From Macrostomum lignano (lineage: Eukaryota), in NCBI GenBank assembly GCA_002269645.1, contig NIVC01001393.1, positions 1 through 64,000 of the forward strand: 64,000 bases of DNA, in the 5' to 3' direction. The notes beneath the pieces were generated by a model. The model did no database searches and was not told the origin of the DNA. It was given only the letters and a program-made list of their open reading frames with translations. Below, in pieces: positions 35,781-38,700 of this stretch (within the stretch, counting starts at the first letter, position 1; each line of letters opens with the position of its first letter). The position numbers were made by a program, and so were the translations under genes.

Positions 35781-38700
35781 ATGCCAGACACAGTCAGGCT
35801 GGTTCTACTCGTACTGTTGCCGCTGATATTTGGTGTCTGCGCACCCCTGCAAGCAGGAGCAGCCCTTAGGTAAACTTCTTGCATATTGCCAGCTCTGCAT
35901 CTCTTGCACGAATTGTGCAGGCCAGTGTAGCGTTGCCAGCTGTGTTGACTGAATGAAAATCGATATTTAAATGCGTGCTTTTTCGTTCTTCTATCAGAAG
36001 GCTGTCCTTGTTAAAACATTTCCATAATTGTTGAGTTTCTATGAATTGGAATTTCCGCGGTTTTTCCGCCGGCGTGTATACTAACGTAGCCATGATTTCT
36101 AATCAAAATCGGATGTTGGTTGGTCAAATTATTCATTACTTATTTTAGTTTGGACAGGCAAAACTACACAACAGACCAGTCCAACAGTTTCACGGTGGAC
36201 CAATCTATGAAAGTGTAAGTGATGAGCACTATTATATTTGAGTCTGTCTGTCTGTCTGTCTGTCTGTCTGTCTGTCTGTCTGTCTGTCTGTCTGTCTGTC
36301 TGTCTGTCTGTCTGTCTGTCTGTCTGTCTGTCTGTCTGTCTGTCTGTCTGTCTGTCTGTCTGTCTGTCTGTCTGTCTGTCTGTCTGTCTGTCTGTCTGTC
36401 TGTCTGTCTGTCTGTCTGTCTGTCTGTCTGTCTGTCTGTCTGTCTGTCTGTCTGTCTGTCTGTCTGTCTGTCTGTCTGTCTGTCTGTCTGTCTGTCTGTC
36501 TGTCTGTCTGTCTGTCTGTCTGTCTGTCTGTCTGTCTGTCTGTCTGTCTGTCTGTCTGTCTGTCTCAGTGTCTGTCTCAGTTTTTGTCTTCGGGTCAGCC
36601 TTGTTGCCTGTCTCAGTGCCCGAGAGTGCAAACTCCAGCTGCAATCACCAACCCCGTAGCGAGAGGCTCAGCAGCAGACTCCTGGCTGGCTACAACCGTG
36701 ACGAAAGTCCTCACAAAGGTAATCCCGAGCATTAGCGCGAGAGCATATTTTCCTCAAGTTTTTAGCTTTCCCATAAATGCATTCGACTCAATTGTAATTT
36801 ACTCTCTGGCCGCGCAGTACTACTTACTTCTGAACCCGTATGTTTTATAAATTTTTATTGGAGCTAAAAGCTTACTGAACTAATCATTTATATAAAAGTT
36901 CCTTGCTTTTTCTCGAATTTCCTCTTTAGAAAGAACATTATTGATCGACTGTTACAGAACTATACTCGACAGAACAGCCCCCATGGAGGTAGGTAAACTT
37001 TGTAGAATTTTTTCTAATGAATTTTTAGAAAAAGCTCCAACTTTTGTAGATTACAGTTCATTTTTTGTGCTGCGCTGCTACTTCCTTAAAAATTATTCTT
37101 ACCTTCAATGTACACCGGGCCCCTGACTATCTTTTACGTGATTAACAACTTCTATCCCTCTCTATACTTGTAAATTGACTCTCTATTTAAAACTTCTATC
37201 CCTCAGTGTACGCCAGGGCAATTGACTCTCTATTTAAAACTTCTATCCCTCAATGTACACCAGGGCAATTGACTCTCTATTTAAAATTTCTATCCCTCAA
37301 TGTACACCAGGGCAATTGACTCTCTATTTAAAACTTCTATCCCTCAGTGTACGCCAGGGCAATTGACTCTCTATTTAAAACTTCTATCCCTCAGTGTACA
37401 CCAGGGCAATTGACTCTCTATTTAAAACTTCTATCCCTCAATGTACACCAGGGCAATTGACTCTCTATTTAAAACTTCTATCCCTCAATGTACACCAGGG
37501 CAATTGACTCTCTATTTAAAACTTCTATCCCTCAATGTACGCCAGGGCAATTGACTCTCTATTTAAAACTTCTATCCCTCAATGTACACCAGGGCAATTG
37601 ACTCTCTATTTAAAACTTCTATCCCTCAATGTACAAGTATATACACTGTAGCCATATTTATTTAAGCCGTAGGTGGAGAAATATTCTTTGAGGAAAGAGA
37701 ATAGCCACTACATATATATCAGATTTTGCATTTCAACTCCCAGCTGCTTTAAACAAATTCAGCCTCTTGGCACTTGTTTGCTAAGGCCAGGCAGGCACCG
37801 CGACTGTGTCAGTGCGAGAGTCTGAAATGTGGTTTTGGCCTTTTTCTAGGCAAGCAAAGCAACCGCCTTCTCTCCGTCGCCACAGGCTTGTAACTTCTCC
37901 TGTTACTCCTGTGAGGGTTTCTCTGTAAATCAGATTCACCCAGCTATTCCTCCGTTTCATCTTCTGTTTTTCCTCTTCTTTCATTGCCCTCTACAAATAG
38001 CACTTTTGCCTTCACCCCTGTCATCTTCTGCTTTTTACACTAGCCTCTGAAACATTATACAACTTTCAGTTCCGTCTATTGTTTCTTCAATACGAGTAAC
38101 TAACCACTCGTATGCTAACCCTACTGATATACGTAGTTTGCTTTCGAGTCCTATTCACAATAGAGGGCTGCTAAATGCAACAAAAGCCAGTAGAGGGAAG
38201 CGAGGAGAGGGAAGAGAGGAGAGGGAAGAGAGGAGAGGGAGGAGAAGGAGGTGAGGGATTAGAGGGAGGAGAGGAAGGAGAGGGAGGAGAGGGAGGAGAG
38301 GGAGGAGAGGGAGGAGAGGGAGGAGAGGGAGGAGAGAAGAGGGAGGAGAAGGAGGTGAGGGAGAAGAGGGAGGAGAAAGAGGTGAGGGAGAAGAGGGAGA
38401 AGAGGGAGGAGAGGGAGGAGAGGGAGGAGAGGGAGGAGAGGGAGGAGAGGGAGGAGAGGGAGGAGAGGGAGGAGAGGGAGGAGAGGGAGGAGAGGGAGGA
38501 GAAGGAGGTGAGGGAGAAGAGGGAGGAGAAGGAGGTGAGGGAGAAGAGGGAGGAGAGGGAGGAGAGGGAGGAGAGGGAGGAGAGGGAGGAGAGGGAGGAG
38601 AAGGAGGTGAGGGAGAAGAGGGAGGAGAGGGAGGAGAGGGAGGAGAGGGAGGTGAGGGAGGTGAGGGATTAGAGGGAGGAGAGGGAGGAGAGGGATTAGA

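What the first reader, a model, noticed from the sequence alone, without database searches (positions are those of the whole stretch)
36660..36988. Duplicated, mutually exclusive exons in a Cys-loop chloride channel
Two 59-nt exons with identical phases (2 in, 1 out) encode aligned peptides: [19 protein letters not shown] and [19 protein letters not shown] (shared RLL..Y.R..SPH). Including both shifts the frame, so only one can be used. This segment is the N-terminal helix/L1 loop involved in subunit assembly. Mutually exclusive exons are known in insect Rdl and GluCl and vertebrate GlyR alpha2, but in other extracellular segments as far as I recall. This may be an independent, undescribed way to switch assembly partners, and automated annotation would likely miss it.
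Basis: partly seen in the sequence, partly recalled or inferred. Interest (0 to 1): 0.75.

Follow-up and report, generated by a model that had tools for sequence, protein, structure and literature searches.

The report
Duplicated helix exon in flatworm channel
A glycine-receptor-like chloride channel gene of the flatworm Macrostomum lignano carries two tandem, same-size copies of the exon for its N-terminal helix, of which exactly one must be used; this is a well-known trick in this gene family applied to an unusual exon, and use of the second copy is still unproven.

Summary
Two 59-nt exons (36660-36718 and 36930-36988) have AG/GT sites and the same phase. They lie in one intron of a complete, intact 446-aa Cys-loop anion-channel gene of Macrostomum lignano. 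Including exactly one keeps the frame; including both or neither gives a premature stop.

Exon B is the canonical copy. Its peptide is identical in three paralogous M. lignano loci, and none of these has an exon-A-like sequence.

Exon A is neither chance nor a freely decayed copy:
- It is the only other match among 58,569 open 19-mers in the window.
- It fits a profile built from 33 non-Macrostomum relatives almost as well as B does.
- Neutral drift from B reaches that fit in fewer than 1 in 10,000 simulations.

I could obtain no transcript evidence. No database protein contains exon A, and the 5' half of this gene is unannotated.

The known mutually exclusive exons of insect RDL and GluCl and vertebrate GlyR alpha-2 lie at the next exon (E3 here). 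However, Lingula anatina RefSeq isoforms X1/X2 of a related gene already swap this same helix exon, through an independent duplication.

Verdict: a probable new member of a known kind, with probability about 0.6 that A is really used. Interest is moderate.

The parts
35781..35869 (+). Exon 1: start codon and signal peptide ([29 protein letters not shown]), donor AG|gtaaac, ends in phase 2
   Evidence: Found by a scan for ATG plus a hydrophobic core plus an in-phase GT. Joined to E2 it gives a complete 446-aa ORF. This is a model, not transcript-verified.
36149..36214 (+). Exon 2: poorly conserved N-terminal extension ([21 protein letters not shown]), donor AGT|gtaagt
   Evidence: Open frame, acceptor ttattttAG, phase compatible with E1 and with exons A and B.
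36242..36577 (.). (GTCT)84 microsatellite in the intron just upstream of exon A
   Evidence: Tandem Repeats Finder.
36660..36718 (+). Exon A: 59-nt alternative alpha1-helix exon, [19 protein letters not shown]. Moderate acceptor (pyrimidine fraction 0.59), donor AAG|gtaatc
   Evidence: Family-profile score is 26.9 bits against -0.5 +/- 7 for neutral walks from B. Absent from paralog loci.
36719..36929 (+). 211-nt intron between exons A and B. It is long enough to be spliced out, so steric exclusion is unlikely
   Evidence: The gene's shortest intron is 84 nt.
36930..36988 (+). Exon B: 59-nt canonical alpha1-helix exon, [19 protein letters not shown]. Strong acceptor (pyrimidine fraction 0.82), donor GAG|gtaggt
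   Evidence: The peptide is 100% identical in M. lignano paralogs P0001, P0002 and P0005. The exon is 47-48/59 nt identical in L001-L003, and all differences are synonymous.
36905..37035 (+). Imperfect inverted repeat (36905-36935 / 37008-37035) that would enclose exon B in a stem. Possible regulatory element, unproven
   Evidence: It is present in the MFE and centroid folds, but the energy is no better than shuffles (z = -0.56).
40078..40145 (+). Exon 3 (68 nt, [23 protein letters not shown]; beta1 strand up to loop D). It is the homologue of the exon that is mutually exclusive in GlyR alpha-2, and by inference in insect GluCl and RDL. Single copy here
40357..46507 (+). Exons 4-10: 40357-40502, 40926-41015, 41100-41182 (Cys-loop), 42191-42390 (loop C with second disulfide), 42749-42848 (M1, PAR, M2), 45912-46147 (M2-M3), 46304-46507 (M4, stop). 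All are single copy
   Evidence: All have AG/GT borders and an uninterrupted frame. No second copies were found. The C-terminal half is identical to UniProt M. lignano fragment P0008.

Best explanation
**What it is.** The window carries a complete gene for a glycine-receptor/GluCl-like, anion-selective Cys-loop receptor subunit of the flatworm Macrostomum lignano. The exon for the N-terminal alpha1 helix and the loop leading to strand beta1 was duplicated in tandem. The two 59-nt copies lie 211 nt apart in the same phase.

**How it most likely works.** The pre-mRNA splices E2 to either A or B, and then to E3.
- Exclusivity is enforced at least by the reading frame. A+B (118 nt) or neither shifts the frame and creates a stop in E3 or E4. 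Such transcripts would presumably be removed by nonsense-mediated decay (inferred).
- Exon B is the default copy. It has the strong polypyrimidine tract, and its peptide is identical in all annotated paralogs.
- Exon A has the weaker acceptor and is the regulated, lineage-specific alternative.

**Result.** Two subunit isoforms that differ at 11 of 19 residues at the top of the extracellular domain. The agonist-binding loops, the pore and the rest of the protein are unchanged.

**Likely effect (inferred).** Work on alpha7 nAChR and GABA-A receptors suggests the swap would affect folding, assembly, surface expression or outer-surface contacts rather than agonist recognition.

**Shown here:** gene structure, homology of A and B, frame logic, structural location, and a protein-level constraint signature in A.
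**Inferred:** that A is actually spliced in, NMD of aberrant forms, how the choice is regulated, and the functional consequence.
For: 1. The architecture meets every sequence criterion of a tandem mutually exclusive pair. The exons are adjacent in one intron, of identical length and phase, with AG/GT sites, and exactly one must be included.
2. The homology is not chance.
3. Exon A shows protein-level constraint.
   - It scores 26.9 bits against a profile of 33 non-Macrostomum alpha1 segments, against 30.2 for B. The best unrelated 19-mer in the window scores 9.7 where A scores 18.4 (scores leaving out the two register-defining positions).
   - At positions where it differs from B it carries family-typical residues: G10, N12, E15, K19.
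   - Neutral codon walks from B to 11 replacements give -0.5 +/- 7 bits, with P about 3-9e-5 of reaching A's score.
   - Joint retention of both splice sites, an open frame and score >=42 has P = 0.005 at 0.5 substitutions per site and <=1.5e-4 at >=0.75.
   - All 8 shared residues use different codons.
4. Isoform A fits the Pfam LBD model as well as isoform B (165.6 vs 163.7 bits), and the model begins exactly at this exon.
5. Exon A's splice sites fall within the range of the gene's constitutive exons.
6. There is a precedent at the same exon. Lingula anatina RefSeq isoforms X1/X2 differ only here, and the locus has 59-nt and 65-nt exons in the same phase.
7. The orthologous group is prone to such exon swaps. 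Nemertean orthologues swap the Cys-loop, loop F/C and M4 exons.
Against: - No transcript, EST or annotated protein contains exon A. The database searches that could have shown one were uninformative, because this gene's 5' half is unannotated and short queries retrieved very few candidates.
- Exon A is missing from three paralogous loci of the same species that keep exon B perfectly. It is therefore either young and fast-evolving or repeatedly lost.
- The codon-level dN/dS of A against paralog B copies is only about 0.4-0.6 on 19 codons, which is not by itself distinguishable from relaxed constraint.
- The first five residues of A (ERLSS) fit the helix consensus poorly.
- The candidate was noticed because it looks intact, so per-locus P values overstate the case.
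- The candidate regulatory stem around exon B is not statistically supported.
Confidence: 0.6

Rival explanations
1. Exon A is an unused or recently retired relic of a tandem exon duplication (a pseudo-exon). Only exon B is spliced into mRNA today, and the intact appearance of A is residual.
For: - A is absent from all three paralog loci, which keep B at 100% peptide identity.
- A has the weaker acceptor.
- The N-terminal half of A departs from the helix consensus.
- dN/dS against paralog B copies is about 0.4-0.6, which is compatible with relaxed constraint on so few codons.
- There is no transcript evidence.
- The Lingula locus shows that degenerate extra copies of this exon do persist next to used ones.
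Against: - Neutral decay to the observed divergence rarely keeps AG, GT, an open frame and this similarity (P <= 0.005).
- Neutral decay almost never yields a sequence that fits the independent family profile this well (P < 1e-4).
- This argues that A was translated for most of its history. Only a recent loss of use would escape these tests.
Confidence: 0.27
2. Exon A acts as a 'poison' exon. It is included together with B, or B is skipped, to produce frame-shifted, NMD-targeted transcripts that down-regulate the channel. It would not produce a second protein isoform.
For: Double inclusion gives a premature stop within E3. The 211-nt A-B intron is long enough to be spliced.
Against: A poison exon needs no coding conservation. 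Yet A keeps the family's key residues in the correct frame and fits the family and Pfam profiles.
Confidence: 0.06
3. Exon A did not arise in place. It was copied in from a more distant Cys-loop paralog (ectopic insertion or gene conversion), so its codon divergence from B reflects the donor gene rather than selection at this site.
For: - A is as close to nemertean and annelid orthologue helices (scores 47, 43) as it is to B (42).
- The paralogs lack it.
Against: - A carries the SPH motif. Among the helix segments compared, that motif occurs only in the closest relatives of this gene (nemertean Lineus/Tubulanus and annelid Owenia proteins, plus the Macrostomum paralogs), while most other segments have PP.
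- None of the other M. lignano Cys-loop proteins retrieved has an A-like helix.
- Its length, phase and position are exactly those of B.
- Origin does not decide whether it is used.
Confidence: 0.05
4. The resemblance between the two segments is a chance open frame in an intron.
For: None beyond the short length (19 codons).
Against: - It is the only hit among 58,569 open 19-mers.
- It has the same strand, phase, length and splice sites as B, and lies 211 nt from B.
Confidence: 0.01

Closest known systems
Lingula anatina 'glycine receptor subunit alpha-3' isoforms X1/X2 (XP_013386520.1 / XP_013392719.1; locus L004)
   Same: - It is a GlyR-like anion channel, 58% identical to the window protein.
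- The two isoforms differ only in the alpha1-helix exon.
- The exons are tandem and in the same phase (59 and 65 nt), between the same flanking exons.
- Including both would shift the frame.
   Different: - The duplication is independent. The Lingula copies resemble each other (score 46) and not the Macrostomum A or B (11-22).
- The two lengths differ by 6 nt.
- The locus has two further degenerate copies at a 122-nt period.
- It exists as RefSeq models. My searches found no paper describing it.
Vertebrate GlyR alpha-2 exons 3A/3B
   Same: Two tandem, mutually exclusive exons in the closest vertebrate relatives of this gene, changing a few extracellular residues (PMC3484359). Teleost read-through models show the two copies side by side.
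   Different: - It is the next exon (68 nt; beta1 strand up to loop D; ...FGSVTETTM vs ...FGSIAETTM), equivalent to single-copy E3 (40078-40145) here.
- Only two residues differ there, against 11 of 19 here.
Insect RDL exons 3 and 6, GluCl exon 3, nAChR alpha4 exon 4 and alpha6 exons 3 and 8
   Same: Tandem exon duplications spliced in a mutually exclusive way in Cys-loop receptor genes. They are conserved across insect orders and alter receptor properties (PMC2064938, PMC4019635).
   Different: - Those exons lie near loop D, loops E/F, the Cys-loop or TM2. None is described at the alpha1 helix in the papers I read.
- They are supported by RT-PCR and are conserved for hundreds of millions of years. 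The Macrostomum exon A has neither kind of support yet.
Nemertean orthologues (Lineus longissimus, Tubulanus polymorphus RefSeq isoform sets)
   Same: They are the closest non-flatworm relatives (61-63% identity over the whole query, 71-73% over exon 4 to M3). They have multiple isoforms that swap homologous segments one-for-one.
   Different: The swapped segments are the Cys-loop exon, the loop F/C exon and the M4 exon. The helix exon is invariant in all 15 isoforms.

Membership tests
Cys-loop (pentameric) ligand-gated ion channel subunit | Extracellular ligand-binding domain followed by a four-helix transmembrane domain | tested here: met
   Pfam PF02931 (165.6 / 163.7 bits) and PF02932 (137.6 / 137.7 bits) for isoforms A / B, both far above the cut-offs.
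Cys-loop (pentameric) ligand-gated ion channel subunit | Signature disulfide loop C-x13-C | tested here: met
   [15 protein letters not shown] in exon 6, read directly from the model.
Anion-selective GlyR / GluCl / GABA-A branch | PAR motif before M2, and a second C-x10-C disulfide in loop C (GlyR/GluCl type) | tested here: met
   AIPARVSLG and [12 protein letters not shown] are in the model. The best solved relatives are GlyR alpha3, alpha2 and alpha1 at E about 1e-112 to 1e-105.
Anion-selective GlyR / GluCl / GABA-A branch | Identified agonist (glycine, glutamate or other) | not testable with these tools
   The agonist cannot be assigned from sequence here. Related mollusc proteins are labelled GluCl and others GlyR-like. 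Convergent glutamate recognition is documented (PMC4338433, abstract only).
Tandem-duplicated, mutually exclusive exon pair | Two neighbouring exons in one intron, homologous to each other | tested here: met
   They are 211 nt apart, with 8/19 identical residues, and are the only significant match in the window.
Tandem-duplicated, mutually exclusive exon pair | Same (or frame-equivalent) length, same phase, usable splice sites on both | tested here: met
   Both are 59 nt with AG...GT. Splice-site quality is within the range of the constitutive exons.
Tandem-duplicated, mutually exclusive exon pair | Each copy alone gives an intact protein; both together do not | tested here: met
   A 446-aa ORF results with A or with B. 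A premature stop results with both or with neither.
Tandem-duplicated, mutually exclusive exon pair | Both copies under protein-coding constraint | tested here: inconclusive
   - B is clearly constrained (0 nonsynonymous and 10-11 synonymous differences to the paralogs).
- For A, the family-profile and neutral-walk tests favour constraint.
- dN/dS is about 0.4-0.6 on 19 codons, and no second copy of A was available.
Tandem-duplicated, mutually exclusive exon pair | Transcripts that contain one or the other copy, never both | not testable with these tools
   No RNA-seq or EST resource for M. lignano was reachable. Protein-database searches found no exon-A-containing product.
Tandem-duplicated, mutually exclusive exon pair | Conservation of the pair in related genes or species | tested here: not met
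   Paralog loci L001, L002 and L003 have exon B only. True orthologues in other Macrostomum species were not available. The Lingula pair is an independent duplication.

The most novel reading that the evidence does not exclude
The alpha1-helix exon is a recurrent target of independent tandem duplication in lophotrochozoan GlyR-like channels (a flatworm and a brachiopod at least). In M. lignano, exon A would be a regulated, cell-type-specific alternative. It would change which of the four near-identical paralogous subunits the protein assembles with, or whether it reaches the surface. That would be control of receptor composition by splicing at a site remote from the agonist pocket, which has not been described for any Cys-loop receptor.
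Probability: 0.15. Interest if true: 0.6.

Novelty: new member of a known kind. Interest (0 to 1): 0.4.

Why it matters
Mutually exclusive exons are a main source of functional diversity in invertebrate Cys-loop receptors, which are drug and pesticide targets. The described cases cluster around the ligand-binding loops and TM2.

A swap of the alpha1 helix would point to a different use of the same trick. The literature links that helix to subunit folding, assembly and surface expression, so the swap would tune receptor biogenesis or subunit partnership rather than pharmacology. Independent duplications of the same exon in a flatworm and a brachiopod suggest this may be a repeated solution.

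In practical terms, the result also supplies a full gene model for a locus that current M. lignano annotation represents only by two fragments. M. lignano is a transgenic-tractable flatworm, so the two isoforms could be tested directly.

Tried and rejected
- **Protein database searches for exon A.** I searched with the full-length isoform B, and with the 113-aa and 170-aa N-terminal parts of isoform A. No product contains exon A. The short queries retrieved only 2 and 12 candidates and missed known exact matches, so this absence is uninformative.
For the same reason I did not try structure prediction of the spliced isoforms.
- **Paralog loci L001-L003.** I looked for an exon-A-like copy with tblastn at E <= 50 and with an AG-N59-GT scan, and found none. 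Introns do not align between paralogs apart from microsatellites.
- **Other duplicated exons in the window gene:** none found.
- **Docking/selector-type RNA structure.** An inverted repeat brackets exon B, but fold energies are no better than shuffles (z = -0.56 and +0.13). I kept it only as a lead.
- **Rfam scan of 35500-40300:** nothing.
- **Minus strand across the exons:** only short or microsatellite-derived open frames.
- **Alternative first exons as an explanation:** rejected. Both copies have acceptor sites and share E1 and E2.
- **Mollusc and annelid isoform sets:** they vary in 5' exons, not in the helix exon.
- **An initial inference I withdrew.** I first took the A/B split to be much older than the paralog split. 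Against the paralog B copies, A's synonymous divergence (pS 0.57-0.66) is no greater than that of the window's own exon B (0.80-0.89).
- **Literature searches** for a described alpha1-helix mutually exclusive exon, or for any M. lignano mutually exclusive exon, returned nothing.
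Full report
**1. Observation**

- Exon A (36660-36718) is preceded by ...ccccgtAG and followed by GTaatc.
- Exon B (36930-36988) is preceded by ...ctctttAG and followed by GTaggt.
- Both are 59 nt. Both begin with the third base of a split codon and end with the first base of the next.
- They encode [19 protein letters not shown] and [19 protein letters not shown].
- The stated neighbours are also right: a donor after 36214 (AGT|gtaagt) and an acceptor before 40078.

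**2. The gene and its source**

I assembled the whole gene on the + strand:

| Exon | Coordinates | Note |
|---|---|---|
| E1 | 35781-35869 | ATG, signal peptide |
| E2 | 36149-36214 | |
| A or B | 36660-36718 or 36930-36988 | |
| E3 | 40078-40145 | 68 nt |
| E4 | 40357-40502 | |
| E5 | 40926-41015 | |
| E6 | 41100-41182 | |
| E7 | 42191-42390 | |
| E8 | 42749-42848 | |
| E9 | 45912-46147 | |
| E10 | 46304-46507 | stop |

- All borders are AG/GT.
- With either A or B the product is a 446-aa protein. With both, or with neither, the frame shifts and stops within E3 or E4.
- The protein has the Pfam ligand-binding and transmembrane domains of neurotransmitter-gated channels, a C-x13-C Cys-loop, a second C-x10-C disulfide in loop C, and a PAR motif before M2.
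- Its closest solved relatives are glycine receptor alpha subunits (E about 1e-112).
- The organism is the flatworm Macrostomum lignano. UniProt fragment P0008 of that species is identical to the C-terminal half, including a stretch of retained intron 7. P0121 matches E4-E5.
- No database protein covers the 5' half, so the region of interest is unannotated.

**3. The similarity is not chance**

- A and B share 8 of 19 residues (RLL..Y.R..SPH) and have a BLOSUM62 score of 42.
- Among 58,569 stop-free 19-mers in all six frames of the window, only A (42) and B itself (102) score 30 or more against B. The next best scores 28.
- Among the open AG-N59-GT windows upstream of E3, the next best scores 3.
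- Adding the shared strand, phase and length and the 211-nt distance, the two are homologous copies.

**4. Which copy is canonical**

- The B peptide is 100% identical in annotated M. lignano paralogs P0001, P0002 and P0005.
- In their genomic loci (L001/L002 and L003) the exon is 47-48/59 nt identical to the window's B. There are 10-11 synonymous and no nonsynonymous differences, which indicates very strong purifying selection.
- None of these loci contains an A-like sequence. I checked by tblastn at E <= 50 and by a dedicated scan.
- The four close paralogs are 92-95% identical in the core. The window gene groups weakly with P0001.
- Exon A is therefore specific to this gene copy. It was either lost at least twice or gained after the paralogs split.

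**5. Has exon A been under protein-level selection?**

No second copy of A was available, so I used three indirect tests.

*(a) Neutral decay.* Starting from B with its splice sites, random substitution keeps AG, GT, an open frame and a score >=42 at these rates:

| Substitutions per site | Probability |
|---|---|
| 0.5 | 0.005 |
| 0.75 | 1.5e-4 |
| 1.0 or more | none in 200,000 trials |

*(b) Independent family profile.* I built the profile from 33 distinct alpha1 segments of non-Macrostomum relatives.
- A scores 26.9 bits and B scores 30.2 bits.
- Leaving out the two register-defining positions, A scores 18.4 and the best unrelated 19-mer in the window scores 9.7.
- Where A differs from B it often carries the family-preferred residue (G10, N12, E15, K19). 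B does so at other positions (I3, D5, Q14).

*(c) Neutral codon walks.* Stop-free walks from any of the three B sequences to 11 replacements give a profile score of -0.5 +/- 7. The probability of reaching A's score is 3-9e-5.

Further points:
- Isoform A also fits the general Pfam LBD model slightly better than isoform B (165.6 vs 163.7 bits).
- All eight shared residues use different codons in A and in the window's B.
- Against the paralog B copies, pS is 0.57-0.66 and pN is 0.43-0.45, so dN/dS is roughly 0.4-0.6 on 19 codons. That figure is weak on its own.
- It also made me withdraw an earlier idea that the A/B split is far older than the paralog split.

Taken together, A diverged quickly, but through a filter that kept a working alpha1 segment. 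This argues that it was translated for most of its history. It cannot exclude recent disuse. These P values carry an ascertainment bias, because the locus was picked for looking intact.

**6. Splicing logic**

- A's acceptor has a moderate pyrimidine tract (0.59, the same as E3 and E7). B's is strong (0.82). Both donors match 5 of 7 consensus positions.
- The A-B intron is 211 nt, while the gene's shortest intron is 84 nt. Steric exclusion is therefore unlikely, and the frame (with presumed NMD) is the visible enforcer.
- An imperfect inverted repeat (36905-36935 / 37008-37035) would enclose exon B in a stem and could favour its skipping. It appears in the MFE and centroid folds, but the energies are no better than shuffled controls. 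It is only a lead.
- There are no Rfam matches and no credible minus-strand gene here.

**7. Structural location and likely effect**

- The alternative segment aligns to [21 protein letters not shown] of GlyR alpha3 and alpha2. It starts at position 2 of the Pfam LBD model.
- From established structures of this family, this is the alpha1 helix and the alpha1-beta1 loop.
- A keeps the hydrophobic positions L3, L7, L8 and Y11 of the amphipathic pattern, but replaces I4 by S.
- Published work summarised in PMC4786271 links the alpha1 helix of alpha7 nAChR and of GABA-A/C subunits to assembly and surface expression. It also shows that the particular helix matters, through contacts with other parts of the extracellular domain.
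- A role in biogenesis or assembly is therefore the most reasonable inference. It is untested.

**8. Comparison with what is known**

- Tandem mutually exclusive exons are classic in this superfamily: RDL exons 3 and 6, GluCl exon 3, nAChR alpha4 exon 4 and alpha6 exons 3 and 8 in insects (PMC2064938), and GlyR alpha-2 exons 3A/3B in vertebrates (PMC3484359).
- Teleost read-through models in my hit list show 3A and 3B side by side (...FGSVTETTM / ...FGSIAETTM). This places the vertebrate case at the exon equivalent to single-copy E3 of this gene, not at the helix exon.
- The same exon is, however, already alternative in database models. Lingula anatina RefSeq isoforms X1 and X2 of a 58%-identical gene differ only in the helix segment.
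- The Lingula locus has a 59-nt exon (7555-7613) and a 65-nt exon (8559-8623) in the same phase between the same flanking exons. It also has two degenerate copies at a 122-nt period.
- The Lingula copies resemble each other and not the Macrostomum copies, so the duplications are independent.
- Nemertean orthologues swap the Cys-loop, loop F/C and M4 exons but keep the helix exon constant. Mollusc and annelid relatives vary only in 5' exons.
- My literature searches found no description of a helix-exon swap, or of any M. lignano mutually exclusive exon.

**9. Verdict**

- The best reading is a tandem, mutually exclusive exon pair in which B is the default and A is a diverged, lineage-specific alternative (confidence about 0.6).
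- The main rival is an unused or recently retired copy (about 0.27).
- It is a new member of a known kind, at an unusual exon, with an independent counterpart in a brachiopod.
- The decisive test is junction reads or RT-PCR across E2-E4, plus the state of exon A in the homeolog and in other Macrostomum species. That test is simple but could not be run with the tools available.

Noticed in passing
L004:7290-8630 (Lingula anatina, LFEI02000170.1): There are four tandem copies of the alpha1-helix exon. Two degenerate copies start near 7311 and 7431 (122-nt period; the end of the exon is replaced and the frame is wrong). The 59-nt exon of RefSeq isoform X2 is at 7555-7613, and the 65-nt exon of isoform X1 is at 8559-8623.
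   Followed up: partly
Proteins P0130, P0133, P0007, P0127-P0135 (Lineus longissimus) and P0126, P0006, P0123-P0125 (Tubulanus polymorphus): The nemertean orthologues have 10 and 5 RefSeq isoforms. These swap homologous versions of the Cys-loop exon, of the loop F/loop C exon (three versions) and, in Tubulanus, of the M4 exon. This looks like several mutually exclusive exon clusters in one gene, and I found no description of it.
   Followed up: partly
Proteins P0091, P0104 and similar teleost 'GlyR alpha-2 isoform X1' models: These roughly 500-aa models read through exon 3A, the intervening intron and exon 3B in frame. This is probably an annotation artefact. It conveniently shows the position of the vertebrate mutually exclusive pair.
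   Followed up: partly
window:42391-42432 and UniProt fragment P0008: The only database model of this gene's 3' half (P0008) includes 14 residues ([14 protein letters not shown]) translated from intron 7. A second fragment (P0121) has a frame error in E4. The public annotation of this locus is fragmentary.
   Followed up: yes
window:36242-36577, 37173-37635, 38202-39894, 40520-40850: The introns around the duplicated exons are filled with satellites. These are (GTCT)84 immediately upstream of exon A, a 47-nt unit x9.9, a GA-rich 9-mer x190, and a second CTGT-type microsatellite after E4. Such repeats might have promoted the exon duplication or might affect splicing. I did not test this.
   Followed up: no
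window:36905-36935 and 37008-37035: An imperfect inverted repeat brackets exon B. It covers B's polypyrimidine tract and a site 20 nt past its donor. It is present in predicted folds but is not more stable than shuffled sequence.
   Followed up: partly
window:33020-33344 and 34591-34914: Two copies of the same roughly 300-nt element lie 1.5 kb apart upstream of the gene. Both translate to VSCYAKFRQLRKNNQVVSTLCAAEITASY... This is probably a dispersed repeat or transposon fragment.
   Followed up: no
window:48300-57100 (+ strand): Long open segments rich in poly-Q and poly-P belong to at least one further multi-exon gene downstream of the channel gene. Examples are 52153-52710, 53684-55009 and 56230-57084. 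I did not analyse this gene.
   Followed up: no
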